From NCBI GenBank assembly GCA_976226885.1, contig OZ320313.1, positions 156,364,001-156,428,000 of the forward strand: a stretch of DNA of 64,000 nucleotides, given 5' to 3'. The translations under genes and the position numbers were made by a program. The stretch comes from Iphione sp. A-MEVVRFRX5. Lineage: Eukaryota. Positions 1 to 54,100 of the stretch are shown one piece after another; positions within the stretch are counted from its first letter, which is position 1, and every line of letters begins with the position of its first letter. A model generated the notes under the pieces. The model was not told the origin of the DNA and did no database searches. It saw only the letters and a list, made by a program, of their open reading frames with translations.

Positions 1-1078
1 CTAGACAGATTTTTACACAGGATTGCTATAGAGCACTGTGAATATACAGTAGCAAATCAGATTTAAGACCACAGATAGGAATACATAACTTGCCCACTAA
101 CCATGATGTGCCTGCATTATACATGTGCAATATATATGACGAACTACGTGTATTTAGACCTCCTAATTGAGCGTCGCTCGATCTGAGTTGCTACTGCATA
201 CTGCTAGTCTCAAATTACTCTCAAATATGGTTGAAATGTTATCAGTCTTATGGCTTATATGCGCGCGTATGTATTTAAGAAACTTGCAAAATACTCATGT
301 TTAATTATACCTTGGTAAGAATGCTGACTTAATGGAACATTTACTGGGATAACCTGTCTATGACCTGCGCCTAAGCGTGCCAAGAAATATAAAGGGCAGA
401 TACTGCAGGTCGCGTGCTAGTGGTAGTAGTGCACTGGAAGCTCACTTTTTGTCAGGTATGAGCTTCAGGCAGGGTCCGAATTCTAAAACTTCGTTTTGGT
501 CACGCACCATTCCATGCAAGACAAATGTCAATCTAACGTTGCAATGTCGTGTTACTGTTGTATGTTAGATACCTATTATCGAGTTAAATGTCTCCTCGGT
601 TCTCTAAAGTCATCTTTTAAGCAGGTCAAACACCAACTATGAACAATGTTGTTGCCAATATCGGACGCCTCAATTTTCGGCCTTTACAGCCTAACGATCC
701 TCTAGCGTACAGCTTAGGGGAGGTTTGGATATTAAGCCATATATGTTTTTAAATAGATACATATGCATCCAAAATGTCTATTAAGGTCTGTAACATGATG
801 AATAACAAACACTCGCATATTAGATATTCTATGCATATGCATGGCGAGTTTCCGATTACGCACACTAAAGGCCTGACAAATGATTTTAATGGATAATTTT
901 CGCTCGCAGAAAGGTTAATATGTACAAAAGTTATAATTCACTGTTTTGGAACATTGCCTTGTGAGTCATTGCGGCTACTATAAATTTCCAGCAGATAACT
1001 GTTTTCGAATAGAAATATCTTAGCTGCTGTGTTAACACCATTCACTTAAGATAACATAATGTATGAGTCATGACTTAC

Positions 1079-1614
1079 CTATGAGTGGTACAAACTCTGA
1101 AGTAGCCGGCATGCTCTCGGCTATAAGGAGCATGAAGACGGAAAAGGCGAGAAGGACGGTGATGCCAAGTGTTATCTTCTCCCCTGAATCAGGCGGCAGC
1201 CAGAACCCAAGCAGGCTAAGGATTGTCAACCACAGGCAGGGGAAGATGATGTTGAACAGATAGTAGAGAGTACGACGCCGCATGACGATGGTGAATGTGA
1301 CGTCTGGATAGGGCTCCGAGCAGCATGGATAGAACACCTCATTTCGAAGTACTTTGATCCCGAGTAGCTCCCATTCACCACTATAGACATAGTTCTGGAG
1401 GTCCACCCTGGCTGACCTGTTAGTTACATCCACCTGGAAGCCGTCATATGTCCATGAGCCGAACTTCATCTTACATTTCTGATCGTCAAATGGGAAGTAG
1501 GTAATATCAATCTTGCACGAACTTCGCAGTTTGGCAGGAGGCGGCCAAAATACATTGCCTTCATTGGACACCATGGCTTTGCTTTGCATGAAGCCTTCCG
1601 TGAAATCATCCGCA
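1079..1614 (-). CDS. Nicotinic acetylcholine receptor alpha-type subunit, large exon (rest of ligand-binding domain, Cys-loop, loop C, TM1-TM2, start of TM3 region)
   Basis: Translates (S)ADDFTEGF...CKIDITYFPFDDQKC (Cys-loop)...WTYDG...YPCCSEPYPD (vicinal Cys of alpha subunits)...RRRTLYY...PPDSGEKITLGITVLLAF...VPLIG. Acceptor caacAG|T at 1616-1615; donor G|GTAAGT at 1078. Downstream exons lie off the left edge. Confidence 0.97.
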
Positions 1615-2017
1615 CTGTTGATCAGTTGGCCACCAGGAAAAGGCGAACCGCGCAGAACGGACCAAAAACACAAGAAGTAAAACACATAAGAAATCAGAAC
1701 TCAACACAGATTGATGACAGGAATCCACGCAAGAGGCATCAGACCTGAAGCAATTTGGGATAAGCGATTTTGAAAGACAATGCATTAGAATTCCCTCTGG
1801 CAATGTAAGAATACTGGACATTTTGTAACAAGAAGATTGCTTCATAATCCAGGAAGTACAGCCCGGTTTATCAGACATCCTTGTAATTATTCTACTTAAT
1901 ATTTTGAAATCGCCGACTTAATAAGCAATAAAACTACTTTCTGAAAGTCGGGTCTTGTTACTTTGCTGTATTCTGTTGCATCATCCAAAACACATTGTAT
2001 TGCAAAGACAGAATCAC

Positions 2018-2127
2018 CTATTGTATAAAACTATATCTGGTAACCATATCCGTTGGCACGGTATGCGAAGCACATGTAATCCATTGAATTCTTTGGGGTC
2101 CCATTTCAACCTTTCGTCTACCCATTC
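2018..2127 (-). CDS. nAChR exon (110 nt), EWVDERLKWDPKEFNGLHVLRIPCQRIWLPDIVLYN(S)
   Basis: Manual translation. Contains the W.PDIVLYN motif; CAG| acceptor and AG|GT phase-2 donor match the phase of exon 1079-1614; 110 nt is the conserved nAChR exon size. Confidence 0.96.
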
Positions 2128-3933
2128 CTGGAAGACAAAGCAAATATGCACAACCTTGGGTGATTACCTTGGCAAAGTGGAGCTGTTTGCATTAGTATAA
2201 AGATCTTTAATGACTATGAATATTTAGAGCCTAGTCTGGTTTACAGTCGTGATGAAGTAACAAAAAGACCAATAATTGTCTGCCGTCTTCGTTCTATCAT
2301 GTGAAGGTTGAGCTTGGCTATACTAATAAGCCAGAGCGTGAGCCGCTATTGAGTAGGCAGAGCCCAAGCGTGTGAGCAATTTAAGAGTAATTCGATTCAA
2401 CGGAGTTAATTGTGGCGGTCTGTTGGCTCAGCTGACGACCACCACTGGGGCTTAGGTGAGATGGCGAGCTAATGCAGATATGAGCAGCTCACGAAAGGGG
2501 CGCTCGATAGTCTCAGACGTCTGGCCAGATACAAGACAGACCCGTCAGTTGGCTGTTCTAGATGGTGGGTTTGATGTGGGTTCTCTTTGCGGGATTGGGT
2601 TGCGTTGAAGCTGATTGGAACTGGGCAAAGTTTGAATGAAAGTGTCCATTTTTTCCCGGTTTGTGGTAGATCAGTGTGGTTTAATCATACCCAAGATAGC
2701 CTACTATAAGGTCAAGTGTGAAACATGCTGAGAGTCAGAGGGTTGGCTAGGTTAAATTTGGTCTGTGAGTGGACACAGGGGGACGGATGGTATGACGCTG
2801 ATGGACATGACTACGAGTGTGGTTGAGCCACTCCATTGCGGGACCTTTTTGCCTTGTGTACAGTCAGTGTTGTTTGTAAAACTAGTGTATGGGGGTTAGT
2901 TGGTAGTGATAGAGGAAGATAAGGATAATAGCGGTAATAAAGATATCAAATAAAAACTACTCTACCCCATGTATCGTGGACATGGCCTTTGTAGAATTGG
3001 TGGGCAAAGGTTGGTAAGGGACTGCCCTTTGTACAGCGGTGGGTGTTATTTGATGAGTGAAGGAGTAGCACTTTAATTCGGAAAGCGACCCTCCTAAGCT
3101 GGAGAAGTGGTCGGGGATTTGATGGTCAGGGGGAGGACGATGGCGACTAATGGCCCCTCACAAAGGGCGATTTTGAGGAAATATTCCTCATACATATCTA
3201 CTATGGGAAGGAGAGTTTGGGACGGGGAAGCTATTTGGTAGGACTGAAGGGTGAAGGGTAGCAGGGATGATGCTAGTGCAGATTGGCAAGTTCGACCCGG
3301 CTGGGCTATACGTCGTTTGCTAGAGCGGGCGAAAGGCGCGTGAGCCGGCGCCCTCAGTTATCAGCTTCCAACCAACAACAATTACCTATTTTCACAGCCA
3401 TGGCTGCTTGTCTCCGGATATTAAACTGGCCCTAGCCACTGGCCGGCTGCTAGGCGAGCTAGGCCTGATACCCTCTAACAGGCGCTGAATGTGAGATTCA
3501 TATCTGACCTCGGAGGCATTCGGGGGTAATTGTAAAACCCCACTTGGTGCTGCCCTCTTTCCAGCCATGCCATTCAGCGACTAACAACCTGGCTATAATA
3601 TGCCGGCCGACTTGCATTAAATTATACAAACATAACACAAATCTGCCATTGCAGGACAAAACAATGTGGAGTTAGGAGCAGAGGATGCATAATCCGGACT
3701 GAATGTAAAACCCCATCGTCCTGGGAGGATTTAGTGCTGACTAAGCCGGAGCTATAGTAGTAAAGGAAATTGTTCTCTACAGCTGCCTTTGTTTAGCCGT
3801 AATATATTGATAGCATATCGGAAGACGGGGTAGTATTGTACCAGAGATAAACGAGAAGGAGGAAATAAATATTAGACTTTATGCATTCAAGCGCATTACG
3901 GTGGATGTATTCAATTGAATTGTTGGTACGCAC

Positions 3934-3978
3934 CTGTTCCAGCCAAACGTTAGTCGTTAACACTTGATTCACCTCGTC
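3934..3978 (-). CDS. nAChR exon (45 nt), DEVNQVLTTNVWLEQ
   Basis: Manual translation. Acceptor attttattttAG|, donor CAG|GTGCG, phase 0/0; conserved 45-nt nAChR exon. Confidence 0.96.
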
Positions 3979-4445
3979 CTAAAATAAAATGTTTTAACAC
4001 TTAATACTGCCTCTATATTCAATGGAATCCATATTATGTGAATACAATAGCACCTGTTACTATCATTATCAGTTCCGTTATTCACAATCCTGCTCACATG
4101 GCTCCGATAAGAAAAGTGATCGATGATGTGTAGAATATTCACTATTGAAAGTTGGTATGCTTCAATTACACGTCAAATCAAACAGCACAAGGTAACAATA
4201 TCCTAGATACTAACTACTTGACATTACATACATATGTGTGTGCACGACAACATACTACCACTTTACAAAAGCACATCGAATCTACACAAATGGAACACGC
4301 GTGCATACTTGAAGCACAATATTTACAAATGCCCCGGTACAATGACGTCTGTATGGGCCGGGAGGGGGAGGCTGTTCGTCAACTGGGTATTGGCGTCAGA
4401 TGAACTTATTCAAAAAGCAGAACATATCAGCAGTGTCCTACATAC

Positions 4446-4621
4446 CATATCAGCTATTTGCGTCAGAGTGAAACCAAACTGAACAGTGACTTTGTTGGAG
4501 GCATTGTAAACGGGCCTGGCCGCCGTGTCGTAGTTGTAAAGGATCTGCCGCAAGAGGCGCTGCTCATCGGGCAGCTCAATCCTGCGCCGGGGCCCGCCTT
4601 CAGTCTCGCCACCATCACCGC
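4446..4621 (-). CDS. nAChR N-terminal exon, proximal variant: (G)GDGGETEGGPRRRIELPDEQRLLRQILYNYDTAARPVYNASNKVTVQFGFTLTQIADM
   Basis: DEQRL...NYD..RPV...F.LTQI.DM is the standard nAChR helix-1/beta-1 segment. Donor ATG|GTATG at 4445. The 5' boundary is inferred from the pyrimidine tract ttgtttacgctttacaactcAG (phase 1) and is less certain. Confidence 0.9.
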
Positions 4622-6289
4622 CTGAGTTGTAAAGCGTAAACAAATGAGCGGCTCCCCATACCACGTGTGAGCTACCCGAGATAGCCTGCTGACCTGAGAT
4701 CACTGGGCAACCTGCCTACACTGGTGGTACGCTGGATAAGAAGTATGGGTACGCACCTCGTGTTGATAGGTTGATGCGATAGGAGCACGCTGGTTAAGGA
4801 AGAACACAGGTGGACAACTCGGGGTAGGATTACTTGTAAGGGATGAGCAGGGATCGGAATCAGTATAATGGTGGATGAGTAAGGTACGATTAGCTTTGAA
4901 AATATTCAGACTATTTGGTAGGATTGTCTCCGTGGAACCCTAGAAATAAAGCCTGCAATGTATTAATGATTGATGGGAGCAAATGCAGGAGAAGATGATG
5001 ATGTGGATGAGTTCAGGGTGCCTGTATATGGTGGGTTGCTCTAGCATATAATTCGCATTGAAAATGATAAGGTCCATTTGCTGAAATCATCCCTGCTGAA
5101 TTCTAGATATAAAGTCTACATAAGGATGAAAAAAAGAGGAATGTAAATGACCAATGGGTATGTGTATTATCCGCACATCCCTAATCCTTCATTATTACAA
5201 GGGATTACAATTTGTTCTTTACTGAGTAGACCCGAAGCTACCTGCATTTGCAATAAACACAAGCGTCAGAGTATATAATTTTTACACAATGCAAAAATTA
5301 GACTGTCACCTCTGGATTCTTTAGATGTAATATTTTTCACATAGTTGTTCTTTGGGTAACTTTTAACAATCGTTGCCTGATGTGCTTTTTCTTACAATAA
5401 CCTGTTCCAAATCTACTGAGTTCGTTGATAGTGATGATAGTGAACAAATTTTGTATTTGTCTTTCTGTTTGCGTCAGTGTAATGTTCTATAGAGGACAAT
5501 TTCAGAACACTACACGCGAGTTAAGTGCAAGTCTCACAAGTAGAGTATCGCTCAAAGCCTTACGAAAAGTAGCCGCACTGTGGTGGACATGTATCTGATA
5601 TGTAGAAGGGCGAAGTAATCTTGGTTCTAATACGGAAATGTCCCAGTAGATGAAAAAAGACATAAGGCAAACACGTTTCTGCGGAAGGGCATGTAAATGA
5701 AACCGCCAAAGTCTGATAGATGCACGTTTTGTGGACATTAGGAGCAGATTAGCATAGCTGAAAGTGAAATTATAGCCCACATTAATACGTTTATCAGGAA
5801 GACTAGCGAGAAATACACGAGATCTACAACGATCCATACCAGGTATCTGCTTCCGAGTAAAAAGGATCTGTTTGAGTAATCTGGAACACCCCTTGAAAAG
5901 GAATTATTTCAACAGTATAAGCTCATACAGTGGAAGGGGATATGTCTTGTCGGTATTTATGACATGTTGTCAGGGCAGTGGGAATGTCGGGGTGTTTCTG
6001 AATAATTCACATCAAACTCATGTATCGTGGCTGTTTCTCGTCAGCACAACCTGAAACAGCATTGCGTCGAGCACAGTCAAGCATTTAAAACAGGAGCATG
6101 CAAACCCTCACACGGAGTGCTATACAACACACAAGCAAAGCGACATGCTTTTCACGGTTGTGGTGGTTCTATTGACTCACGGGCCTTTGTTACGGGAACG
6201 GTAAAGCTCGCCACCAGCCTATAAACCTACAGTGTCATGCAAAAAGGTTTGAGGAAGGGATCTGGGAAGACCTGCAGGGACTAACTTAC

Positions 6290-6426
6290 CATATCGGAGA
6301 TTTGAGTGAGCGTTAAGCCAAATTTGACTGTTACAACATGGGAGGCGTTAAAGACTGGTCTGGAAGCCGGCTCGTAATTGATGAGGAGCTTGGTCATGAG
6401 CCGCTGCTCGTCCGGCACGCAGCACT
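6290..6426 (-). CDS. nAChR N-terminal exon, distal variant: (E)CCVPDEQRLMTKLLINYEPASRPVFNASHVVTVKFGLTLTQISDM
   Basis: Not in the ORF track; manual translation. Clear paralog of 4446-4621, with no stops, donor ATG|GTAAGT at 6289 and acceptor ctaactcttgtAG (phase 1). Confidence 0.9.
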
Positions 6427-7520
6427 CTACAAGAGTTAGTGGGTTAATCCTGGGACACATCTCACAACTCCACCAGTCACCCTTTTACAGATTTTAACAG
6501 TCTATTGGGCTAATGCTCAGTCGTCCTGAGAGACGTCCAGGTGTGACTGTCATGTTAAAACCCCGTTCGTCAAATTGGCGTCCAGGCAAATTGCCATGTT
6601 TGATGGAGATGAGTTGAAGGGGCCGGGTAAAACACTTGTTTTAACCGTTTTGTTGTTAAAGGAATATCAAATAATGATGTAGTCTTGATTCAATCAGCGA
6701 TTCAAACGTAAAAGCAAGAACATGGAGTAATATACCTAGTCAATTCGAATTGGTTAGTTGGTTTAAGGAGACATTTTAAAAATGGGAGGAAAACTATAAT
6801 GTTCACGTTTTGGACTCATGTCAAAAATATCAGATTGGTTTCTCAGACCGGGGTATTATCATTTTCAGTAATCGGGTGTCGTACTATTACAGAGATGATG
6901 AATACCAGGTTGCAGTATTAGGGTAGTAAAAAGAGACGACACCGTTGATTGGTTAAGATCTATGCCGGAGAGATAGGCCATTAGCTTATAGTTTACTGCC
7001 ATGAATACGACCATAAAATCTTTAGCAATCAAGGTAATTCCAATCAGGCATGGCGTTAGTGCTATGGGTGCTGTGAGATCGGACAGATACTTCGGATCGA
7101 TAACGGAAGGCTTCCAAGAATTAAAGAGGACACACAGGTTCTGTTTCTTTAGACCTTAACCTAATGATAAAAAATTGAATGGGACAGGCAGCATTAGAAA
7201 GGATTAACCTTTAACATATTCGTGTAAATAATTGTTACAATCTTAGTTACACTATTATGAACCTAGAGTTCATCAAAAGATCAACTAGTATAATCTATAG
7301 CAGTAAACTATGATACTAGATATTATATACACATAATATATATAAATATTTATATGCATACGTGTAACACATGTAAAGTGAAGCTTTATACACGAACCTG
7401 TTTACGAAATGTAAACTTCAGACATTTTAGAACTGGTAGTATGAGGATCCTGAAACCTTTTGGGGATCTAGGGATCGTTATAGGAGCACAAGGTGGCACA
7501 AGCAAGAAAGCAAGCCTTAC

Positions 7521-7607
7521 CATTCTCCAAATTTAATCTCGATCTTTTCCCACCTCCCTGCTGTTGTTTATTTATCAGGTGTTTCTGCTGGTTCAGCCGG
7601 CCTCCCC
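7521..7607 (-). CDS. Candidate 87-nt phase-1/1 nAChR upstream exon, (G)GGRLNQQKHLINKQQQGGGKRSRLNLEN
   Basis: Acceptor gtctcttgttgcttgccctcAG, donor AATG|GTAAGG, open frame, phase-compatible with both N-terminal exons. No homology evidence. Confidence 0.4.
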
Positions 7608-9209
7608 CTGAGGGCAAGCAACAAGAGACGCGTGAAGTGATAGGACAGAGACGCTGCCCCACGCGGGGCTTGAGGCACCACCGCTCAGTGTGTATATTTC
7701 ATGCTTGTCCTGCATGCTCCATTCCATCCCTATTTATTAGCAGTAACGGTAGTTATTTGAACAAGATGCCAGAGGCTTACTTGGATGTACAGGCTGGATT
7801 TTCTGGACACTCCCTGTCAAAAACTATTTTGTTAATCGCTTAGGATTATCCTATTATCTTACATGTGTTAGCTTACAAAGTTGGTTACAGCACATCAATT
7901 TATATCAATATACATGTAGGTGGAACCGTATTATATAATAGCAAATGCAGGCGAATGTATGTGTTAATAAAACGATACTATTAAGAGCTACAATTTACAA
8001 CATTAAAACTAACAGGGGTACAAAATTAAGAAACAGAGAAAACTGTATTATCTACATTCTACACATCGCTCTAGAGCATTGACCTCCACGACAGAATGGC
8101 TCGAAAAAAAAATCTACTTCCAGTTCCGTATTAACCGACGCATGCCGGAAATGACCCACTCCCGAACCTGTTTACCTATTGTGGAGTTGGCTCCATCAGA
8201 ATTAGTCCCTGGCGGCCAACGAGAGCGCGCCTGGTGTTAATGCCGGATCTTGCTCTAAGGTGGTAGGAAATGCTGGCCCTGGTCTTAATCGTATATAGAA
8301 ATCAAGAGAGACCTACTATAGCTACTACTGGCTTTCGATGAAAGTAATGAGGGCAGAACCTAATGCGTACAGAATAGTTTACAAACAGCCAATAGCAACA
8401 TGCACATATGTGGAAGTTACAGTGGAAGTTGTGCAAAGCGTCGGGAGACTTAAGTCTGTGGAAGCAAAAAAAAAAGAAACCGGCGTTTCCTTCTTAAAAT
8501 AAGTAAAACAATATATGATTCTCACATACTGAAAAGACGGAAGGCGAAAGGAATCGATTACACAATATGAATTCTACAAACAAAAATAAGCAAAAGTGGT
8601 CAATGATAACGTCACGTTCTCTCTCCTTCACGCCCACTAGCGCTCTCCTTCTTGATAATCCATTCTCTTTCACTCTTTGAACGATGAAATGCCCTACCTG
8701 GAGAGCGGATCTAATGAGACATAATGACTACAACGACAGAGGGAGCTGTTTCAGACGACAGCAGTGTAAACGTTACACGTGTAAAGGGAATGACCATACC
8801 CTTGCCTCTCCTCCTGTAAACGCCGGCTGCCGAGGGAGGGAGAGAAAGCCATAACACAATGAGTCACTCAGTTCTGGCTTTTATAAGCAAACCTTTGATG
8901 TGTATCACCCAAGATAGCGTGCAATCGAGAAGAGTCGGGCTGCGGATCCGATTGGGTTGGAGTCCCGGCGCTGGTTAGTTAGGCAGTGCGCCAAGATTGC
9001 CGGTGGGTGGCACTAATGGTCCCAACGCATTATTATCAAAGTGAGAAAGGCCCTGTCTTGAAAGACCGGAAAGACCCATGGGGGAGAACGACGGGTATTT
9101 CCATGGAGAAATGTTGACAGTTTAATGGCCGTGAAAGCTAGAGCTTTCATAGGGCCAGAGGCTTTTAATTCCACGGGGATGAAAGCTGGGTCTTTACCGG
9201 ACTGATTAC

Positions 9210-9265
9210 CGTGTTTCCGTGCAAGAACGCAAATTATCATGAGGAAGAACACCTGTGCTGTCCTG
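9210..9265 (-). CDS. Weak candidate exon encoding a signal-peptide-like hydrophobic stretch, RTAQVFFLMIICVLARKH
   Basis: Long pyrimidine tract plus CCAG|CAG acceptor; phase-1 donor CACG|GTAATC. No in-frame upstream ATG in the genomic sequence. Confidence 0.2.
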
Positions 9266-10535
9266 CTGGAAAGGTGAAAGTGTAATAGGTAGGACAAGTT
9301 GCTTTTTCCGAGGAAAAATCTCCGTTAAAGGTCAATTCATCACGTGAAAGACATGTTATTTTGATAAGAATAGGGACGGTAAACTTTCATCGATAGGCCA
9401 GCTAGTCTGATGTTGGATAAACACGAGCGATTCTTTTCTCTGCAAAATGCTCTACCAGAAAACAAAACTTAGACTGGCTTGATATTCAATGGCACCCCAC
9501 CCGGCTGAGCTGCGTAACTGAACAGGTTTTTACGCATAATTTGATAAATTGTAAGAAAGGAACATCGTTGTCGGCGAGTTTACTTTCTGTTGTGATACTT
9601 TAGAGTCATCGATTATAAAAACTAAGAATTAGTTCATTTTGAGGTATTTAATGATCTAATTAGGATTCAAATCCGATTAATTTGTAAATAACGTCTAATG
9701 AAACGTGGGCGAATAGATTTAATCACCATGCGTGTTATTTACGTAAATTATAGGAATTAAATAAATGATTAGAATGTCAGTCGTTCGCTGGTATTTCTGA
9801 ATGAAATTAATAATGCATCCCGAAATGTCTAGATGGAGTTCAGACATGGAATAAAGTCATTTAGTGAATTAAAACATTCCGATGTCTTGAATAAACATCC
9901 AATACTTGCACAGTTAATCTCTTGATTTTACATGAAAAATACATATAATTAAATCAAAGCTTTTTCAATTCTTAATATCACAAACAACGAGTAAAGGACT
10001 ATTATCACATGATAGTTGTATTTTACAAATGAACCGTATGAACTAATACTTGACGAAGGCGTTTCTACCCCCAAATCATAAGGGTCTGTAGACTGTATGG
10101 AAAGATTAATTTGTTAACAAGAGCCACTCAGAACACTTGGCAGAGGGATTACTCACTGGCTTTGGCTGCCGTGCAAACAGCGATTGCGACCATGCCAGTG
10201 TACATCATAAACAGAATCCTCCGTGACAGGTACATTCTTCAGGCGTGGTGGTCGAACCTGCAAAAGGCAAAAGGAACAGTTCGAACGGTTCGGCCAAACT
10301 TTCCACATTTGAAAAAAAACATGTCGCAGGATTCCTTCAGATTAATGCCATTTAGAGTGATTTAAAGCCTGGTTTCAACCTTGGGAACTTGAATACTTTA
10401 CATTCTTGGTGAGCTAGTGACCAGAATTCTGATTGACGTGTACTACGAATCTTTTATTTAAAACATGGCTTTATAAAGGTTGTTATATAAACGGGCGCGA
10501 AATATACAATGCAGCAGCAGTTACTATAACGGTTA

Positions 10536-10895
10536 GGTCAAAAGAATTAGGTGTGTTTCTGGTAACCCACCCTAGTAAAACCTTACCCTACCAAAACATT
10601 TTTTGTCCTCAAAGGGTTTCCAAGGTTAAATATCCTTATATACTTGTTTTTGCAGCACATATTTTTAGTAAATTCAGCAGAAAAACAGCAAAGTCCATGG
10701 AATTTCAGCAAAGAACTGTGAAACTCATGCAAATTGGTCAAAATTCTTCATAATATCTTTATTATTGTTGAAAAACAGAAGAAGAAAGTGGAAAAGAATT
10801 ATTAAAAAGAAAAGATACACCCCTCCCTACGTAGGTTTTTGACTGTCGTTACCAAACACATACATGCATTTTTTTTTTTTTTTGGGGGGGGGGCC
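10536..10895. mobile_element. MITE / non-autonomous DNA transposon, family copy 1 (~360 bp)
   Basis: Imperfect TIRs (gtgtttctggtaac near both ends), flanks TTA|GG...CC|TTA. Reverse-complement homolog at 23846-24189; ends shared with 34043-35841. Confidence 0.75.
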
Positions 10896-11830
10896 TTATT
10901 TCGAAATCTGTGTGGCTGCAAATTCCTTTCACTTTCATGTATGTATACAGTGGTCCCCCCTATCTGACATTTTTGGTTCCTTAAAATTTTGGCAGATATG
11001 TGAGATTTGTCAGATTTGAAAACATTTTTAATTGATTTTTCACATTTGATTCCTGGAAACTCCATCGGAAAAGCAGTATTGTCGGTTAAGAGGCTGTTGG
11101 TTAAGGGGGGATCACATGTAAATACATATATGTTTTACTGATTTATTCCTCAGATGTACCCTATTTATCCATGCTCCTATTACTTATAATAATACAGTAG
11201 ATACCGGGTTAAAGACCAAAATGATATCGCCGATGTTTAAATATTGATTAGTCTCTTCTATATACCCTTGGCAATTTCTAAACACTGCCCCGAAACATCA
11301 ATGGCACTCTTGCTCGATCGGATATTTACGCCCTTTGCTGTATATAGTTTGAGAAATTCATATCAAGAAGGGTTGACAAAATCTGGTGATGAGCTTCGTC
11401 GTATGGGTAATATCGAAACCCTATCTGTGTTTCCATTAATTTGCTGTAATGTACGTTATTGATCTTGCGCTCTACGCTGAGAGTGTAATATGTGTAATGT
11501 ATGTACATAAGCCGACTAGGCCTCTATACAGACGTGTAACATGTTTCTCAAGAATTCAAAGGTGTGCGTTCCTTACGAGAAGAAGGCAAATAAAACGCCG
11601 AGAGAAAACCCATAGCGACTTGATTCTGAGTACAAAGGGACCATCGAGTGGTTCCTACCTTTAAGTACCCTTCCTCCTTACATCTTTCTTGCTCCCCTAG
11701 TGCCACGATCGATGCCTGTGTGCTAGTTGTTGCCGCCTCATCTGGAGCCCCAATCGATCGCTTTGTTCACCCGATCCGTCCCCTGCTTAATTGAAAGATC
11801 GACTGCTTTTTGACCCCACCTTCCACGGCC

Positions 11831-11843
11831 GCGCCTCTAGCGG
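11831..11843 (-). promoter_or_regulatory. Weak CTCF-like motif CCGCTAGAGGCGC
   Basis: One G shorter than the CCGCTAGAGGGCGC-type core; same orientation as the motifs at 22179 and 26762. Confidence 0.2.
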
Positions 11844-14069
11844 CGTCCCACTACGGTAAATAGCCAGCACGAACGGCCAAAGTTGCTGGTTCCAGCATGA
11901 ATATGGCGGTAATCTTCAGGTCTTTCCCCAATGTCAGTTCATGAACTACTTTCATTGAGAGGGCTTTTTTTCTGAAGGAGGCATAGCTAACCCGAGAATA
12001 TTCAATACGCTCGAATAAAAAAAAACAAAACATCATCTATGGATACCACAAACATGGTATGAAAAGAAAACATCACTTTTCTTCTTATTTGGCGGTTGGT
12101 AGACGGATGTTTAGATAATGAGTTGTTATTCTATCCAATTAATCAGGACGGTATGACGGGATCGTACTGTCATCCTAATCGCATGAATGTATCTATTGAC
12201 CACAGCCATTTCCATGTAACACGTTAAGTCCTTGTAATCCCGGCGATGGTGGCATGGATGTTATCGAACATGCAGGCAGTAAGCAAAAGCAGAATAACGT
12301 CGGGATAGATTTTGCTGTGGCTTACAGAATGGGGAATTGTATATGCGGGCATGTGAATGAATGGATGTGTCTTTAGGCACTGATCAATATTTCAAAAAGT
12401 AACACTTAAACATGTTAGTAATGAATAGTGTAGCACTGCACATGTTCTAGGTATTAAATACTCTGCAAGTTATACATTGAATCACGTTCGCCTTTCTGCC
12501 TGTTCTGTTGAAGTTTTCATGCCATCTATAAATGGGGAGGTTTCCCCACACATGAAAGACTCGACTGATATCGGAAGATCCATAGACTTAGCCTTTTAAT
12601 GCTGAGCGTGTTGGTCACAGCAGAAGTGTCATATGCATTTGCCTCGGGTGGCAACTGTAGGCTTCAGTGGGTAAGCTGAGGTTAGTGTAAGTCTGGAGGT
12701 CACAGACGGCCAGCCACTCACCAATCACCTTATGTGGATGAAGGGCCATTCTTTGATCATGTTTCCATCCGTTCCCCACTAAGAGGACTTTACCAACTGC
12801 TCTTGCCTTTTTTTTTCTAACTTTCCCTTCCATCAAAAGCCAGACGTCAGGCACAATTGCGGATTATGTCTGTGTAGTTATATCCGTGTCACAGGGACCA
12901 CTATCTGGCCTATTAGAAGCGGTGAAAAACTGTTCTCTACTATGCTGACAAATGGTTATTGCTGACAAACATCTCATAGAAAAGATTTAGTTGCCATTCA
13001 TACTTCACTTTACAGTCATCCATCATTTTGTTTAGATCTGTTCGACAGCTTTTCTGGCATAGTATTTACACGCTGCTGCCATAATGCCGTCGTCCACGAT
13101 GCATATTTGAACTCTCATGCTTCAAACCGAACTCTTTTTGTATTAAGAAAACCAAGTTCAGACGTACATTTGTCAAACAGATTATACGTTGACGCGTGGA
13201 CATGATTTCTAGACAGAGCGCATTGATTAAATTTGTAGTTGCTAATTTAAGAGTAGACCACGAACTAACCTCAGAAATGCTTTTAACGACATGACGTTTG
13301 AACATCTAGAGAGATGGAATCTACGATTACAGTGTGTTTTACTCTACGGCAGCACGCTTTTAATGAATGAATCTGGATTCTATCCAGGAAGATTTATGCA
13401 GCCACTCAAGCCTTCAGCTTAAAGGATAAGTACTTTTCCTAGAACCAGAAAGGTCATTCTAAGAACACTCGGGGTGCCGGGTACAGTGTTGACAATTCAA
13501 TACGTAGTCCGAGGTACAGTCCAGGCGTGGCTGATTACGACTTCTACATGACATAGATAACCATTTAAAAGTTCGAAGGTGCGGCAAATAACCATCAAAC
13601 CTCCCCTTGATCCTCTCCTGTATTGAAACAGCTTTAAATGTTTAAGACAAGTGGTCATCATACACTAACCTAGTCATTGATTTTCGCCATCAATAAATAT
13701 GAAGATATATATGGTAGAATGGGCCTCTGTTTATAACTGTGTCATTTCAAGAGCAGTGGGGGAAACGCTGAATTATCAGCATTATCACTGTTATAATCTA
13801 TAATGTGATATATAAGATAATCCGGTAAAAACGACAGTTGGAATACGACCTGTAGATTTTAAGTAACCACCCACTAGACAGCTCAAAATAAGCATTGTTT
13901 TGATACGCGGATAAGTGTATTAATAAAAAGAACATGGAAAAGCAGGAAATTAGGTGCAATTCCTAGTAATATTCATGGGTTGCTTAGAAACGCATGTAGG
14001 TGGAAGCAGTTTATTAGATGGAAATAAACCTCTCCTCGTATTGAGTAGTCATGAACGTTATGCCTCAGC

Positions 14070-47700: not shown

Positions 47701-48075
47701 CTGTCAATTGATAACCCAGTGTATAAGTAAAGTGCTATTGCTGCGTCTTGAAACTATTCTTTTTTAACAGTACAAGTACCAAATTCGTCAGAATACCAAA
47801 GAATAACGGTTTATTTCCTTTAAATGGAGCATCAAATACGCCAAATGTCGCATTGTGAGTTCTTGTCCGTGGAAAACTGTTGATCACAGAATTCAAAGAC
47901 TGAAACCTGAACACAAAACCATTAAGCAAACGATGTGACCTTTAGTTGTGCCAAGGTTTGAGTACCTGCTGCTGGATATCTCAGCACACCTTTGTGGTCG
48001 TCCCATCAGCTGTGCGATTCTAATTTGGCTCTAATCCTAAGAATGTTGTTTTTCTACCCATCTAGTAATGAATAG

Positions 48076-48336
48076 TGTAGCGTTTCCCATTACGTAATAA
48101 AGACATGACCAAGGTTGTGAACAATGAAGGTTTATTCCAGAGATGTGAACACTACGGCGACTCAGCCTAGACTGACTCCCTCCTCCCTAGCAGCCCCTTA
48201 TATACCCTACCCAGGGGCAGGGGGGGGGTGGTGGGGAGTGCAGCACTCCGCACCCCCGGCGCGTCCTAGTGCAGCACTCCGCATGCAGCACTCAGCACCG
48301 GGGTTGCCTCCTGGTGCCGCACTCCGCAGCACCACA
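48076..48336 (-). repeat. Element 1 3' LTR
   Basis: Appears identical by eye to 56925-57185. On the minus strand: TATATAAG (48204-48197), AATAAA (48136-48131), and four TGC[AC]GCACTC[CA]GCA copies (as read on the plus strand) in U3. Confidence 0.99.
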
Positions 48337-48348
48337 CTGCCCCCTCCC
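48337..48348 (-). other. Polypurine tract GGGAGGGGGCAG
   Basis: Directly abuts the TG of the 3' LTR. Confidence 0.9.
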
Positions 48349-48445
48349 GAAACGAAACTTTGTCCCCAAAGTTCTAACATACTTCAACATCGGAACAGTC
48401 CAACCGTAACCTGGAACAGTCAACAAGGCACAGGTGATCCACAGC

Positions 48446-51163
48446 TCATCGTAGGGACACTGTCCACACCTCCTTCAGGTTGGCGACAACACAGTCGCCG
48501 TCGCGGGACTGGTCCCAGGTGGTCAACCTGCGCATGGCAGTGCCCCTAGTGAGGTTCTCAAACCTCCGTGCGTGCCAGCGCATTAGCTCGGCTGAGCCTA
48601 GCTGATCCGGTCCCCTCGGCCGGAAACGAATACTCTGGTTGAGGGTCAGCTTCACCTGATTTCCCCCCAACGCCTGGACTTCCGATCTCCCTGATGCTCG
48701 TACGATCTCCCAGCCCTCGGGAGGTGCGGACTGGCAAGAGACGAAGCGTACTCCGGTTTCTTCTGGCGAGGGGGGGGAGATGTCCTGGTAAGACCAATAT
48801 TGCGTGGGGGACCGAACGCCCGACGGCAGCCACGGCTGTCCAGCCCCTCGTCCCAGGCCCGGCGACGACAAGGGGAGTACTCGCGCCGTAGGGGATATGG
48901 CTCCTCGCGCCAGGTTCGGAAGGGACGCCCGTCTCTGCAAACGGGGGCCTGGGGGTGTCCAGCGTGGGGGCGCGTCCCCGGAGGGACCGGGCCGTAGGGG
49001 GCGGTCGACGAGGGCCTCCACGTTCACACTGTGCACCCGTAGCGGTCCTCGGGGCGGTGGCACCGCGCCGGCCCCAGGGACAACTGGCGGTGCCAGCTCC
49101 ACGTTGAAATCCCTGGGAGGAGGCTCGTGGTCGGGCGCCACCCCGGGTCCTTCCTCGTCGGTATGGGGTGGCCTTGGAGAGCCGGGGGCCGGCTCGAGTT
49201 GCCCCGTCTCATCCTCACGGTCAACAGGTGGCGGCACTCCCGGTCGCTCTCCAGCTACACCTGGTCGTGGCGGCTCGACGACATTGGTGTCCACGTTCCC
49301 TTCGCCAGTCCCCAGTCCGGCCGTGGTAGACGGGTTCGCTGCGGGGGGTGTGCGTAGAGGGGCCACCGGACCGACTTCCTCCGATGGTGCCGGTGATGCA
49401 CTTCCGGTCCCCTTCTCCTCCCGGTCCGGAGCCCTGGGTGGGGGACCCGCTGGACGTGCCGGCGGACCCGTTGCGGAGGGGCCAAGTGAAGAGGAAGTAG
49501 GCCCGGCCTCCTCCTGGTGGACTGCCAAGGGTCTGCCGACCCCCACCCCTGCGTCGCTGGAGACGTCCTGAGGCTCGGTATCCTCCTCAATCGGCGTGAG
49601 CCCGCGGCCCAGCCCCCCCGGTGGGGTCAACGCGGAAGTACCGCCCTGGTCCGACGGCGAGGTGGTCGGTCGGTCCGCTGGAAGCCTTGGAGGCGGCGGG
49701 GTGGATGTGTCGTCCCGACCTGACGTACTGTGCTGGGAGAGGCTGGCCAGGGTAACTGCGGCCTCCTCCTCTAAGTCTGGAAGTTCATCGGAACTGATGT
49801 CATCGACCCAGAAGGAGGTGCCCAGGGTCTCGGCAAACACTCTCCTTATGGGGCTGATGTCAAGCGCATCGCCCTTCTTGGTGGAAGACCCTGGTGTCGA
49901 GGGGGAGGGCGCTGCCGTATCTCCTCCGGGGGTTATCTCGCCTTCCATGGGGCGGGTCTCGCTCCCCGGTCGCTTCCGGGGGAGGGGAGGGGAGTCCTCC
50001 GGCGAATCTGAGATGACCACCGGTTGGGACGGCGAGGCCTCCTTCGACCAGCCTGGTCCAAGGCGGCGGTCTAGCTCTTCCTCTGTGTCAGTGGCCGACC
50101 CACGACCCAGCTTGAGCGGCGGCTGCCCTGGCCGCGACGACTTAGATGGGGGAGCCTTCCCCTTTCCTTTTCCGTGCGACTTCGTCGTGGCGGGTCCCTT
50201 GCCCTTACTTGCCCCGGCACGGCCTTGATGACGTGTTGCTGCTCGTCCTCTGCCCGGCGAATATACGGCATAGGGGGGTTGGGCCGTCGGTCCAGGGGAG
50301 GGGTGCGCCGGGGTGGCCTGTTCCTCCTCGTCTTCTTCGACCCTCGACTGGGGGGGGGTGAACAGCTGCCGCCCTCCAGACCCCTGGTCAGCTGGTAGGT
50401 TGATCCCCTTTGGGGTTGGGACCAGGGGGAGGGCCCGCGCGCACGTGGTCGGACGTTCCTTAGGGGCCCTGGCGTAGGTCCGTGGCCGCATCCTCTCTGG
50501 CGGTGAGGCAGACCCTCCGCTGGTTCCGGCCCGGCTGCCTGGCGATGGTCCGGCCTCGGAGGTTGATCCATGCGCCGGCGTCTCGGACTGAGAATCCGCC
50601 GACCCGGCTGACGCGGAAGTAGGCGGCCCCTTGCTGCCCGCGGAGCTGCTGGGGGTTGCTGGGGCAGAGCGGTCGGTGCCGAGTCGGCGACGTGCCCGGC
50701 GGGCTGGTGGGCGCGATGGTCGAGGGGGTGCTTCCTCTCCCGACTCGGCGTCCTCGTCCGAGGACTCAACGACCTCTGCCCTGAGATCCTTGGTTCTTGC
50801 GGTGGCCTCGCGACGGCGCCGCCTGGCCAGCTCTGTCAGCTTGTCTGCAGGGCACTCGATGGCGACCCCACGGGTGGGGTTGAACCCCGAGAATCGCACA
50901 TAACCGATGTCCACTGTCTGTGTCATCTGGAGGGATCGGTGTACCCCCAGAAGGTGCCGTTTCCAGTCCGTTCGTCTGCGGAAGGCGGTGTTCTTGCAGG
51001 TTTGGACGGGGCAAATCCAGCCGAACCCCTTAGGGCTGTGCACTTGCTCCATATGGCGTCGTAAATTTTGCCTCTGCTGGAAACCAGTATCGCACAGATG
51101 ACATGCGAATGGAGCTGTGGCAAGGGGTACTTCCCCGGAGGCAGATGGGGTCTGGTCGGTCAT
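48446..51163 (-). CDS. ORF3-like module (905 aa from MTDQT): two C2H2 fingers, ~700-aa Pro/Ser/Gly/Ala-rich region, ~120-aa ordered C-terminus; in frame with pol
   Basis: FACHLCDTGFQQRQNLRRHMEQVH and CPVQTCKNTAFRRRTDWKRHLLGVH at 51109-50939. The ATG is preceded by the acceptor ttgcttgtttgtcccctgcAG|GA. Confidence 0.8.
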   Translation of the reverse strand: MTDQTPSASGEVPLATAPFACHLCDTGFQQRQNLRRHMEQVHSPKGFGWICPVQTCKNTAFRRRTDWKRHLLGVHRSLQMTQTVDIGYVRFSGFNPTRGVAIECPADKLTELARRRRREATARTKDLRAEVVESSDEDAESGEEAPPRPSRPPARRARRRLGTDRSAPATPSSSAGSKGPPTSASAGSADSQSETPAHGSTSEAGPSPGSRAGTSGGSASPPERMRPRTYARAPKERPTTCARALPLVPTPKGINLPADQGSGGRQLFTPPQSRVEEDEEEQATPAHPSPGPTAQPPYAVYSPGRGRAATRHQGRAGASKGKGPATTKSHGKGKGKAPPSKSSRPGQPPLKLGRGSATDTEEELDRRLGPGWSKEASPSQPVVISDSPEDSPPLPRKRPGSETRPMEGEITPGGDTAAPSPSTPGSSTKKGDALDISPIRRVFAETLGTSFWVDDISSDELPDLEEEAAVTLASLSQHSTSGRDDTSTPPPPRLPADRPTTSPSDQGGTSALTPPGGLGRGLTPIEEDTEPQDVSSDAGVGVGRPLAVHQEEAGPTSSSLGPSATGPPARPAGPPPRAPDREEKGTGSASPAPSEEVGPVAPLRTPPAANPSTTAGLGTGEGNVDTNVVEPPRPGVAGERPGVPPPVDREDETGQLEPAPGSPRPPHTDEEGPGVAPDHEPPPRDFNVELAPPVVPGAGAVPPPRGPLRVHSVNVEALVDRPLRPGPSGDAPPRWTPPGPRLQRRASLPNLARGAISPTARVLPLSSPGLGRGAGQPWLPSGVRSPTQYWSYQDISPPSPEETGVRFVSCQSAPPEGWEIVRASGRSEVQALGGNQVKLTLNQSIRFRPRGPDQLGSAELMRWHARRFENLTRGTAMRRLTTWDQSRDGDCVVANLKEVWTVSLR

Positions 51164-54100
51164 TCCTGCAGGGGACAAACAAGCAACAGTATAAGTCGGG
51201 GCTTCATACAAAGCAGGTGCGGCATGAACGATTGAACTCCGCAGCGGCGTAGCAAGTGCCGCTGCGGCTTTAAGGTGGCGCTGCGGCGGGTCACTACCAG
51301 AACTCCGCTGCACTTTTTTACCATGTACTAAATGCGGCGAATTATCACTCAACTGTCGCTGTTGCGGCCCCCTATCGTGCGGCGAATCAGAACTCCGCTG
51401 CACTCGTGGCGAACTATCGCTAATACTCCGCTGCCGATGTTTACTTGCTGCTGCGGCGTGCGATCCCCGATTATCGCCCAATTGCCAAGGCGGCCTAGAG
51501 GTGAAATCATGCCTTACCTCCGCTGTAAGTTTTCCTGCGCAACGTAGGGGTGGTGCTGCGACTAATCTTGTTGTTTTCGCTCTTGCCGATTCGTGCCAGA
51601 TGGAGTTGACGATGAAACTTGGTGTAACTGCTGCGGCGGCCTTTTCACGCTGCGCACTCCATGGGTTGTCAGGGACGCTGGGCCGAGCGTCTCGGTCGAC
51701 CGCGGCGCCCCCTATCATGAGTGCGGAGTTCCCCCACGTGTTGCGGAGTTTTGACTTTGACTCCACAGCGGCGGTTGCCCCTACTCTGGCCTCCGCAGCG
51801 GCCGATTTTGACTTCTCCGTGGCCACTGTTGCGACGTCCTCGGTTATCGCCGGCTTGAGGCGATCTGCATGCACAACCTTCCTTCGCGCACCTCTCCCTA
51901 TTCGATAGACAACTGCGGACAGTCTCTCCTCCACCTGCCACGGACCTTCCCACCAGCTCTGGAACTTGGGAGATACGCCCTTTTTTTTTAGTGGGGTGAA
52001 AAGCCACACTTTCTGTCCCACCACGTACTCCTGGGGGCGCACCTTCTGGTTATACCAGTCCTGCCACAACTCCGCTGCCTTATTCAGCTTGCAAGCGACC
52101 CACTGGTGGGCTTCCCGGACTTCTCCTTCCACCTGCTGCGCATACTCGCCTCTTTCCATGGTTGGTCCTTCAGGGTACCCGTAACGGAGCTCGGCTGGGG
52201 TAGCAACCTCCCGATGCAGGGTCAGCCAGTTAGGGGACACGCCCGTGGTGCTGTGGGGGGTGGCCCGATATGTAGCCATGACGAAGGGGAGGGCCAAGTC
52301 CCAGTCGGCCTGCCTCTCTTCTCCCAGGGTGGCTAGCATGCTGGCGAGCGTCCTATTGAAACGCTCCACCACTCCGTCGGCTTGGGGGTGGTATGGTGTG
52401 GTCCTGGATTTCTCGATCCCCAGCAATCGTAGCACCTCCGCGAAGAGTTCGGCTTCAAAATTCCGCCCCTGGTCGGAGTGCAAGGCTCTAGGAGGCCCGA
52501 AACAGCACACCACTTCCCTGACAATCACTTCGGCGGTTGCCCGAGCTGTGATTTCCGCCAGTGGGAACGCTTCTGTCCATTTAGAAAAGTGGTCCGCCAC
52601 TACTAGAATGTAATGGTGTCCCCGCTCCGTGCGCGGGAGTGGCCCTAGGACGTCGGCTGCTACCAGTTCCCAAGGCTCGCTGACTTTCCGGTACTGTAGC
52701 GGTGCCCTCTTGTTGCGGTATGGCCCCTTCCTACGCTGGCACGCCTGACAAGCTTGTGTCCAGCGCAGGACGTCCCGCCGGAGTCCAGGCCAGAACCACT
52801 TAGTCCTAAGAGCGGCTCCGGTCTTCTCCGCTCCCAGGTGGCCACTCAACACCCCTTCATGAGCCTCTTGCCAAACCTGTTTCCGTAGACTCCTCGGCAC
52901 GTATGCCTGATACACCAGTCGCGAGGGCTCTTCCTGCCAACACCGCATCAACACCCCACGCCGGAGGCTTAACCGTCTCGCCTCAGCGCGCAGCTGGCGC
53001 TCTTCCCAGGACAACCCGGGTTCGAGTCCGGGGATTTCTCTACCTTCCTCGAGTGCATCTATGATGGCGGCTATGGGCTCCTCCTCCCGCTGGGCGTCCC
53101 GCAGCTGCGGTCGATCTCCAGTTGGGTCCACGGTCACCATGGCCGTGAGCTCCCGCACCGGTTCTTCCCCCTCCTCGTTACGGTGGCACTGTTTACAGCG
53201 CTGGCGAGATAGCCCGTCTGCATTGCCATGTTTCTTTCCGGGTCGGTGGACGATTAGCAGGTCATAGCAGAATATTTCCTCCAGCCACCGCGCCAGCTGC
53301 CCCTGGGGCTCACGGAAATTGCACAGCCAGCGCAAGGAGTCGTGGTCAGTGCGTATCTCCACAGTGTGCCCTCCCACATAACAGCGGAACTTCCGTAATG
53401 CGAACACCACTGCCAACAATTCTCGACGAGTGACACAATAGTTCTTTTCAGGGCGCGTGAGGGTCCGGCTGGCGTACGCCAACACCCTCTCCTGTCCCTC
53501 TTGCTCCTGGGACAGCACCGCACCGATGCCCATATCCGACGCGTCCGTGTCGATCAAGAGTCGTCCTTCTGGTTTCGGGAACCCCAGGATGGGTGCCGTC
53601 ACCAGCCGTTCCTTCAACTCCTCGAAGGCCAATTGGCACTGCTCTGACCACGCGAACTCGGCGTGCCGATCGGCCAGTGCGTGTAGTGGTGCTGCTATCC
53701 TCGCGAAGCCCTCCACGAAATTTCGGTAATACGAGCAGAGGCCCAGGAACCCGCGCAGCTCCTCTTGGCAACGAGGCACAGCCCATTCCGCCACCGCCGC
53801 TATCTTGGCCGGGTCTACTCCGACCCCCGCGGCGGACACCCGGTGCCCGAGGTAAGCCACCTCCCGTCGGAACAGCTGGCACTTCGAAGCTTTCACATGC
53901 AACCCGGCCTGCCGGAGCCGCTGGAACACCATTCCTAGGCGCTGGCACATCTGCTGCACCGAGTTACCCAGCACGATAACGTCGTCGAGGTAGACGAGAC
54001 ACTCCATGCCGACAAGCCCTCGCAACACTGACTCCATCAACCTTTCGAATGTGGACGGGGCATTGCACAGTCCAAAAGGCATAACTCTAAACTGGTAAAG

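What the first reader, a model, noticed from the sequence alone, without database searches (positions are those of the whole stretch)
4446..6426. nAChR gene with two duplicated, mutually exclusive N-terminal exons
Seen: two paralogous exons (PDEQRLLRQILYNYDTAARPVYNAS...LTQIADM and PDEQRLMTKLLINYEPASRPVFNAS...LTQISDM) lie 1.7 kb apart. Both are intact, with phase-1 acceptors and phase-0 ATG|GT donors. I found only one copy of each downstream exon and none between them. Joining both would shift the frame, so they should be used one at a time, by mutually exclusive splicing or alternative promoters. Established: mutually exclusive exons are known in insect nAChRs (Dalpha6 exons 3a/3b and 8a/b/c, Dalpha4 3a/3b). 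Inference: one gene yields two receptors differing in the N-terminal helix and beta-1 region, which affects assembly and subunit interfaces.
Basis: partly seen in the sequence, partly recalled or inferred. Interest (0 to 1): 0.7.

Follow-up and report, generated by a model that had tools for sequence, protein, structure and literature searches.

The report
Alternative N-terminal exons, worm nicotinic receptor
An alpha7-like nicotinic acetylcholine receptor gene of a probably annelid genome has two interchangeable copies of the exon for its N-terminal helix; selection has kept both intact in related genomes, so the gene very likely makes two receptor versions, a known kind of isoform switch at a site not described before.

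Summary
On the minus strand lies an alpha7-like nAChR alpha-subunit gene with two paralogous versions of exon 2: 2a at 6426-6290 and 2b at 4621-4446. They are 28/43 aa identical. Single exons 3, 4 and 5 follow.

- **Splicing logic:** both copies have canonical splice sites and the same phases (1 in, 0 out). Reading 2a into 2b hits a stop inside 2b. Skipping both hits a stop in exon 3. Only one-at-a-time use gives a receptor.
- **Conservation:** three related genomes (L015, L016, L001) carry the same 2a/2b pair. Their introns no longer align, yet pN/pS is 0.01-0.08 for each exon. Neither copy is a relic.
- **Upstream exons:** I found one conserved signal-peptide exon (10235-10157) and two conserved phase-1 linker cassettes (27 nt and 87 nt) upstream. 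I found no second signal-peptide exon between 2a and 2b. That favours true mutually exclusive splicing here.
- **Other phyla:** RefSeq orthologues in molluscs, a nemertean and a brachiopod have isoform pairs that swap this module, each with its own signal peptide.

No RNA run was listed, so usage is inferred. I found no paper on it. The scan has noted other duplicated nAChR exons in this genome, but not this pair.

The parts
10157..10235 (-). Exon 1 coding part. It holds the ATG and a 26-residue signal peptide ending AKA, and its donor is in phase 1 (CCA|gtgagt).
   Evidence: It is a conserved block in otherwise unalignable sequence: 80% nt identity to L015 and 76% to L016. ATG, open frame, length (79 nt) and GTRAGT donor are kept in all three genomes. 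It was first picked up by a signal-peptide and donor scan.
8800..8826 (-). Candidate 27-nt micro-exon A, phase 1 to 1, encoding a basic linker (GVYRRRGK).
   Evidence: It is bounded by cag| and |gtatg in both the window and L015. There are 3 synonymous and 0 non-synonymous differences. It was not found in L016.
7521..7607 (-). Candidate 87-nt cassette exon B, phase 1 to 1, encoding a polar and basic linker.
   Evidence: It is bounded by an AG acceptor and a gtaag donor. It has the same length and an open frame in the window, L015 and L016. pN/pS is 0.6-0.8, so the sequence is only weakly constrained.
6290..6426 (-). Exon 2a, 137 nt, phase 1 to 0. It encodes a Cys-Cys pair, then the N-terminal helix, the NAS glycosylation motif and strand beta1.
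   Evidence: Orthologues lie in L015, L016 and L001 at 91-98% aa identity, with conserved branch site, acceptor and gtaagt donor. pN/pS is 0.02-0.07.
4622..6289 (-). The 1668-nt intron between 2a and 2b.
   Evidence: It has no nAChR-like exon, no block conserved with L015, L016 or L001, no signal-peptide-like ATG exon and no notable inverted repeat.
4446..4621 (-). Exon 2b, 176 nt, phase 1 to 0. It encodes a 15-residue Gly/acidic/basic linker, then the same helix, NAS and beta1 module.
   Evidence: Orthologues lie in L015, L016 and L001 at 86-93% aa identity, with phase-1 acceptors and a conserved gtatgt donor. pN/pS is 0.01-0.08. Read in the frame left by 2a, it has a TGA at 4465-4463.
3934..3978 (-). 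Exon 3, 45 nt, phase 0 to 0, single copy (loop D strand).
   Evidence: It is 100% identical at protein level in L001, L002, L003, L015 and L016. If entered from a phase-1 donor it reads into a TAA.
2018..2127 (-). Exon 4, 110 nt, single copy.
1079..1614 (-). Exon 5, 536 nt. It holds the Cys-loop, loop C with the vicinal Cys pair, M1 and M2. The last exon (end of M3, the intracellular loop and M4) lies outside the window at L013 8997-8452.

Best explanation
This is one intact alpha7-like nAChR alpha-subunit gene. Its exon 2 was duplicated in tandem long ago, and both versions are still coding exons.

A transcript takes the signal-peptide exon (10235-10157). It may also take one or both of two small phase-1 linker cassettes. 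It then takes either 2a or 2b, and then the common exon 3.

Exclusivity is enforced at least by the reading frame. Both versions enter in phase 1 and leave in phase 0. Taking both, or neither, therefore runs into a premature stop, and such a transcript should be removed by nonsense-mediated decay.

The two products differ in three respects:
- The stretch before the helix: a Cys-Cys pair in 2a, a 15-residue charged linker in 2b.
- 15 of 43 residues of the N-terminal helix, the following loop and strand beta1.
- Nothing in the binding loops, the pore or anything downstream.

**Shown:** the anatomy, the phases, the frame logic, the selection on both copies, and the single conserved signal-peptide exon.

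**Inferred:** that both are spliced in this species, that they share exon 1, that NMD acts, and any effect on assembly or partner choice.
For: - **Homology and splice sites:**
- **Frame logic:** the 2a-to-2b reading hits TGA inside 2b in the window and early stops in L001. Skipping both gives TAA in exon 3.
- **Conservation:** the same pair, in the same order and phases, is in L015, L016 and L001. Introns do not align. Synonymous differences are near saturation (pS 0.4-0.9) while pN is 0.01-0.06 for each exon in all six pairs. A binomial test against neutral expectation gives p from 3e-9 to 8e-13.
- **Different donors kept:** the donor types differ and are kept in all four genomes, gtaagt for 2a and gtatgt for 2b.
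- **Shared first exon:** one conserved signal-peptide exon with a phase-1 donor fits both acceptors. Nothing is conserved between 2a and 2b, and no signal-peptide-like ATG exon lies there.
- **One gene only:** there is one set of downstream exons.
- **Other phyla:** RefSeq isoform pairs in Lineus, Haliotis, Octopus, Lingula, Patella, Mytilus and Biomphalaria each use one module joined to the same exon 3.
Against: - There is no transcript evidence for this species. No RNA run was listed and no reads were laid.
- In every RefSeq orthologue examined, each module has its own signal peptide, which means alternative first exons and not a shared exon 1. A poorly conserved first exon for 2b could have escaped my scans.
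- No competing RNA pairing or other active exclusion signal was found. Exclusivity rests on frame and NMD alone.
- One related genome (L003) shows only one exon 2 within 6 kb upstream, so the pair is not universal.
- The two linker cassettes are supported by conservation only.
Confidence: 0.6

Rival explanations
1. The switch works by alternative promoters or first exons. 2b, or 2a, has its own undetected signal-peptide exon, so the choice is made at transcription start, as the RefSeq models of other lophotrochozoans imply. Splicing then simply follows.
For: - RefSeq isoform pairs in seven genera have a different signal peptide in front of each module.
- In bivalve-like contigs the upstream copy is fused to a signal peptide and the second copy follows after about 40-60 nt. 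A second first exon is needed there.
Against: - In the window and L001 both 2a and 2b are internal exons with phase-1 acceptors and no in-frame ATG upstream.
- Only one signal-peptide exon is conserved among the window, L015 and L016.
- Relaxed scans find no candidate in the window's or L016's 2a-2b intron.
Confidence: 0.27
2. One copy is an unused relic of a tandem duplication, and only the other is ever spliced.
For: - There is no RNA evidence in this species.
- One related genome (L003) manages with a single exon 2.
Against: - Each copy keeps an open frame, splice sites and phase in four genomes.
- pN/pS is 0.01-0.08 while flanking introns are unalignable.
- A relic would have decayed like the introns.
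Confidence: 0.04
3. Exon 2a belongs to another gene, or to a truncated upstream paralogue, and not to this transcription unit.
For: nAChR genes are many in this genome (85 exon-5-like matches), and some lie in tandem.
Against: - No other exon 3, 4 or 5 lies in the window or in the 20 kb downstream.
- The next paralogue is about 177 kb away and has its own exon 2.
- The order exon 1, 2a, 2b, exon 3 is kept in L015 and L016.
Confidence: 0.02

Closest known systems
Insect nAChR alpha6 mutually exclusive exons 3a/3b and 8a/8b/8c (Jin et al. 2007, PMC1919356)
   Same: Both are tandemly duplicated exons inside a nicotinic receptor gene. Both are old and conserved, and one is used at a time to make subunit isoforms.
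   Different: The exons differ. In insects they are the 45-nt loop D exon and the M2 region. Here it is exon 2, which encodes the N-terminal helix and beta1, and exon 3 is single. The insect exon 3 copies are both 45 nt, so taking both keeps the frame, and silkworm cDNAs containing both are reported in that paper. Here taking both breaks the frame. The insect case has RT-PCR proof, and this one has none.
RefSeq isoform pairs of the orthologous 'alpha-10-like' gene. Examples: Lineus longissimus XP_064619929.1 / XP_064619930.1, Haliotis rubra XP_046574361.1 / XP_046574362.1, Octopus sinensis XP_029633438.1 / XP_029633439.1, Lingula anatina XP_013393011.1 / XP_013393012.1, Mytilus edulis XP_071171440.1 / XP_071171441.1
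   Same: It is the same gene family (about 80% identity over exon 5). The same module is swapped (helix, NAS motif, beta1, ending in DM). It joins the same exon 3. One form has a short pre-helix stretch and the other a long basic one.
   Different: In those models each module has its own signal peptide. In the window's clade both copies are internal exons behind one conserved signal-peptide exon. One-to-one orthology of 2a and 2b across phyla is not resolved on 43 columns. These are automatic annotations, and I found no paper that discusses them.
Human CHRNA7 and its partial duplicate CHRFAM7A (dup-alpha7)
   Same: An alpha7-type subunit whose N-terminal part is replaced by other sequence while binding loops, pore and C-terminus stay. 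A PDB entry title names this chimera (9qto). That it alters assembly and function is my own recollection.
   Different: The human case is a separate fusion gene that replaces exons 1-4 with unrelated sequence. It is not an alternative homologous exon within one gene.
Other duplicated exons in nAChR genes of this same genome, noted earlier by this scan (s1-356240, s1-351966, s1-356245)
   Same: The genome, gene family and kind of feature are the same.
   Different: They are other genes, about 40 Mb away, and other exons (loop D, loop A, M1). I did not test those notes.

Membership tests
Nicotinic acetylcholine receptor alpha subunit, alpha7-like | Neur_chan_LBD followed by the Neur_chan_memb domain | tested here: met
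   Pfam on exons 2a, 2b, 4 and 5 gives PF02931 (E 7e-34 on exon 5) and PF02932 (E 4e-22). The best PDB matches are alpha7 chains, E 6e-64. The M3-M4 exon was found at L013 8997-8452.
Nicotinic acetylcholine receptor alpha subunit, alpha7-like | A Cys-loop (two Cys 13 residues apart) and a vicinal Cys pair in loop C, which is the alpha signature | tested here: met
   The exon 5 translation shows C-x13-C (CKIDITYFPFDDQKC) and YPCC.
Mutually exclusive exon pair from tandem exon duplication | Adjacent homologous exons in one gene that encode the same structural segment | tested here: met
   They are 28/43 identical, E 1e-22. Both cover Pfam positions 1-40 of the domain. They lie 1668 nt apart with nothing coding between them.
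Mutually exclusive exon pair from tandem exon duplication | Both copies have usable splice sites and identical entry and exit phases | tested here: met
   Both have AG acceptors in phase 1 and GT donors in phase 0, in the window and in L015, L016 and L001.
Mutually exclusive exon pair from tandem exon duplication | Including both or neither is not viable | tested here: met
   The lengths 137 and 176 nt are not multiples of 3. There is a TGA inside 2b when it is read after 2a, and a TAA in exon 3 when both are skipped.
Mutually exclusive exon pair from tandem exon duplication | Both copies maintained by purifying selection | tested here: met
   pN/pS is 0.01-0.08 for each exon in six pairwise comparisons.
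Mutually exclusive exon pair from tandem exon duplication | Transcripts contain one copy or the other, and not both | not testable with these tools
   No RNA run was listed and read laying was not usable. The only indirect support is RefSeq isoform pairs in other phyla.
Mutually exclusive exon pair from tandem exon duplication | Both copies are spliced from the same upstream exon. This separates the pattern from alternative first exons. | tested here: inconclusive
   One conserved signal-peptide exon fits both acceptors, and no other was found. RefSeq orthologues, however, use separate signal peptides.
Insect alpha6-type exon 3a/3b switch | The duplicated exon is the 45-nt loop D exon | tested here: not met
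   Exon 3 is single in the window. The duplicated exon is exon 2.

The most novel reading that the evidence does not exclude
In this annelid-type lineage, an ancient lophotrochozoan pair of alternative 5' modules (each a signal peptide plus a helix exon) has been rebuilt into a strict internal mutually exclusive pair behind a single signal-peptide exon. Two further optional phase-1 linker cassettes (27 nt and 87 nt) lie upstream. One gene could then make up to eight N-termini. The 2a form carries a conserved extracellular Cys-Cys pair, which might set partner choice or covalent linkage of subunits.
Probability: 0.3. Interest if true: 0.55.

Novelty: new member of a known kind. Interest (0 to 1): 0.42.

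Why it matters
The N-terminal helix of alpha7-type subunits is needed for receptor biogenesis (my recollection of mutagenesis work, not checked here). It sits at the top of the extracellular domain, away from the agonist site.

An alternative helix that selection has kept in four related genomes, with N-terminal module swaps annotated across several phyla, points to a role other than ligand binding. Assembly, chaperone dependence, partner choice or clustering are the obvious candidates. The two forms could be tested side by side in oocytes.

It also adds a third site (exon 2) to the known nAChR exon switches. It offers a possible case of an alternative-promoter pair and a mutually exclusive pair being two states of the same ancient duplication.

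For annotation, gene models of this family should carry both forms and never both exons together, as one Octopus vulgaris model does.

Tried and rejected
- **RNA evidence:** The look-up of sequencing runs on window:1001-7000 (kind rna) listed no run.
- **Spliced contigs in the protein collection:** hits to the 2b open frame all read on into the intron (…DM then V), so they are genomic ORFs and not transcripts.
- **Competing RNA pairing (docking or selector type):** there is no notable inverted repeat in window 3979-7000, and nothing shared with L001.
- **Rfam on 1-12000:** no match.
- **Spliceosome incompatibility (U2/U12) and steric hindrance:** I rejected both by reading. All sites are GT-AG of U2 type and the intron is 1668 nt.
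- **The 'cag|G ATT' acceptor:** it is shared by both copies in the DNA alignment. I considered it and rejected it. It is in phase 2 with a poor pyrimidine tract, whereas the phase-1 acceptors are the ones kept in L015, L016, L001 and L003.
- **A signal-peptide exon between 2a and 2b:** none in the window or L016, and only weak, unconserved candidates in L015 and L001.
- **Orthologous loci with long introns:** L004, L005, L006/L011, L008 and L009 did not reach exon 2 within the 10 kb flank.
- **Cross-phylum orthology:** I grouped copies as short/upstream against long/downstream types. The tree on 43 columns is poorly resolved, and the AU test rejects my grouping as one clade (p 0.003), so I make no one-to-one claim outside the annelid-type clade.
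- **Joined spliced model:** none was searched or folded. Exons were searched one by one by reference.
- **N stretches and human-like sequence:** none met.

Full report
**What is there**

The finding lies on the minus strand. Reading 6700-3800 in that orientation shows two exon-like blocks with canonical splice sites.
- 2a is 6426-6290. Its acceptor is ttgtag|AG, preceded by cactaac, and its donor is ATG|gtaagt.
- 2b is 4621-4446. Its acceptor is aactcag|GC and its donor is ATG|gtatgt.

Their translations are 28/43 identical and 38/43 similar, E 1e-22. Each passes the Pfam gathering score on positions 1-40 of Neur_chan_LBD. Each aligns to residues about 4-41 of mature alpha7, which cover the N-terminal helix, the loop with the NAS glycosylation motif, and strand beta1.

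Downstream come single exons:
- exon 3 at 3978-3934 (45 nt)
- exon 4 at 2127-2018 (110 nt)
- exon 5 at 1614-1079, which holds the Cys-loop, YPCC in loop C, M1 and M2

Exon 5 matches alpha7 structures at E 6e-64. The last exon (M3 end, loop, M4) lies just left of the window at L013 8997-8452.

A permissive tblastn of every exon against the window and 20 kb downstream finds no second exon 3, 4 or 5. The genome is 1.18 Gb and has at least 85 exon-5-like matches. The next paralogue lies about 177 kb away and has its own exon 2. The two exon-2 copies are each other's best match genome-wide.

**Frame logic**

Both copies enter in phase 1 and leave in phase 0. Exon 3 is phase 0 to 0.
- Read in the frame that 2a leaves, 2b runs into TGA at 4465-4463. 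The same reading in L001 stops early.
- If both are skipped, a phase-1 donor joined to exon 3 reads TAA inside exon 3.

So exactly one copy per transcript gives a receptor.

I did these checks by reference, exon by exon. I searched and folded no joined spliced model, and that step is left out.

**Comparative evidence**

No RNA run was listed for the locus, so I turned to related genomes. A word search with exon 5 found unnamed genomic ORFs at 85-94% identity, and I fetched their contigs.

Three genomes carry the same pair in the same order:

| Locus | Exon 5 aa identity | 2a | 2b |
|---|---|---|---|
| L015 | 98% | 9040-9174 | 10235-10369 |
| L016 | 98% | 9339-9473 | 10112-10243 |
| L001 | 94% | 607-741 | 2516-2650 |

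Between these genomes and the window only exons align, and introns do not.

By Nei-Gojobori counting on the 43 shared codons:
- 2a shows 13-27 synonymous against 1-6 non-synonymous differences.
- 2b shows 19.5-24 synonymous against 1-5.5 non-synonymous differences.
- pN/pS is 0.01-0.08 in all six pairs.
- A binomial test against neutral expectation gives p from 3e-9 to 8e-13.

Other features are also kept:
- the branch motif and acceptor of 2a
- the phase-1 acceptors of 2b
- the two different donor types, gtaagt for 2a and gtatgt for 2b
- in 2a, a Cys-Cys pair just before the helix

Neither copy is decaying.

A fourth genome (L010, the upstream part of L002) has two tandem phase-1 copies about 500 nt apart. 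L003 has only one copy within 6 kb, and it mixes features of both.

**Upstream exons**

A scan for an ATG, a hydrophobic core and a phase-1 donor picked 10235-10157. This proved to be one of the few conserved blocks upstream of 2a. It is 80% identical to L015 and 76% to L016, and ATG, length (79 nt), frame and GTRAGT donor are kept. It encodes a 26-residue signal peptide ending AKA. Its phase-1 donor fits both acceptors.

Two more conserved blocks have exon borders and are phase 1 to 1:
- a 27-nt micro-exon at 8826-8800, found in the window and L015, with synonymous changes only
- an 87-nt cassette at 7607-7521, found in all three genomes, with the same length and an open frame but weakly constrained sequence

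Both encode basic or polar linker. They are candidates only.

Nothing is conserved between 2a and 2b. Even a relaxed scan finds no signal-peptide-like exon in that intron in the window or L016.

**Other phyla**

A search from the Elysia orthologue's exon-5 region returned full-length named orthologues. Their 90% clusters hold RefSeq isoform pairs. In Lineus, Haliotis, Octopus, Lingula, Patella, Mytilus and Biomphalaria the isoforms differ in exactly this module and share exon 3 onwards.
- One form has a short pre-helix stretch.
- The other has a long basic one, as with 2a and 2b.
- There, however, each module has its own signal peptide.

Bivalve-like contigs show the first copy fused to a signal peptide and the second copy about 40 nt downstream.

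On 43 columns the annelid-type 2a clade (88/90, with L010's upstream copy) and 2b clade (92/83) are supported. Deeper orthology is not resolved, and my cross-phylum grouping is rejected (AU p 0.003). The swap of this module is therefore widespread in Lophotrochozoa, but I cannot say that it is one event.

**Mechanism**

The best-supported reading is one-at-a-time use of 2a or 2b.
- In this clade both are internal exons behind one conserved signal-peptide exon. I therefore favour true mutually exclusive splicing, with frame plus NMD as the enforcing rule (0.6).
- Alternative first exons remain the main rival (about 0.27), because that is what the RefSeq models of other phyla show.
- I found no docking or selector pairing and no Rfam element.
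- The splice sites are of U2 type and the intron is long, so spliceosome incompatibility and steric hindrance do not apply.

**Known or new**

Mutually exclusive exons in nAChR genes are established for insect alpha6 exons 3 and 8 (PMC1919356). The survey of lophotrochozoan nAChR expansion does not treat alternative splicing (PMC6896357). Four literature searches found no description of an exon-2 switch.

Automatic RefSeq annotation already carries the isoforms in other phyla. Earlier notes of this scan report other duplicated nAChR exons elsewhere in this genome. I did not test those notes, and they concern other genes. This pair was not among them.

Those notes call the genome annelid-type. 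My nearest named orthologues are a gastropod (Batillaria, 84%) and an annelid (Lamellibrachia, 82%) for exon 5, and Lingula and the annelid Dimorphilus for 2b. That is compatible with an annelid origin, but I did not establish it.

**Verdict**

The feature is real and conserved. It is a new member of a known kind, of moderate interest, and awaits RNA confirmation.

Noticed in passing
L002 7086-8890: The intron after exon 4 of the orthologue holds a long array of units about 43 bp long. Each unit repeats the last 12 codons of exon 4 (KIWLPDIVLYNR-like), some with stops. It is a minisatellite born from the exon's 3' end.
   Followed up: no
window 48000-57000: A block of GC 0.61-0.64 sits in a window that is otherwise about 0.42.
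   Followed up: no
window 11742-11816 and 10236-10263: A short block 1.5 kb upstream of exon 1 is conserved with L015 (29 nt at 93%). An acceptor-like ttgcag|GT lies about 24 nt before the ATG and is conserved in L015 and L016. Together they suggest a non-coding 5' exon further upstream.
   Followed up: partly
L014 982-1365: In an AT-rich, bivalve-like metagenome contig, a signal peptide is fused directly to the first exon-2 copy. The second copy's acceptor lies only 40 nt after the first copy's donor, which is probably too short to be spliced as an intron.
   Followed up: partly
P0236 (Octopus vulgaris CAI9719256.1): This gene model contains both N-terminal modules in tandem, joined by read-through. 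It is probably a mis-annotation of the alternative pair. It does show the genomic order, short-linker copy first.
   Followed up: no
P0148 (Mya arenaria X2), P0268 (Mercenaria mercenaria X2): These RefSeq isoforms lack the 45-nt exon 3 (loop D strand) and keep the frame, so this may be a second optional exon in bivalve orthologues.
   Followed up: no
window 6419-6424 and the same place in L015, L016, L001: Exon 2a begins with a conserved Cys-Cys pair just before the helix. It is absent from 2b and from the orthologues of other phyla that I looked at. Its role is unknown.
   Followed up: partly
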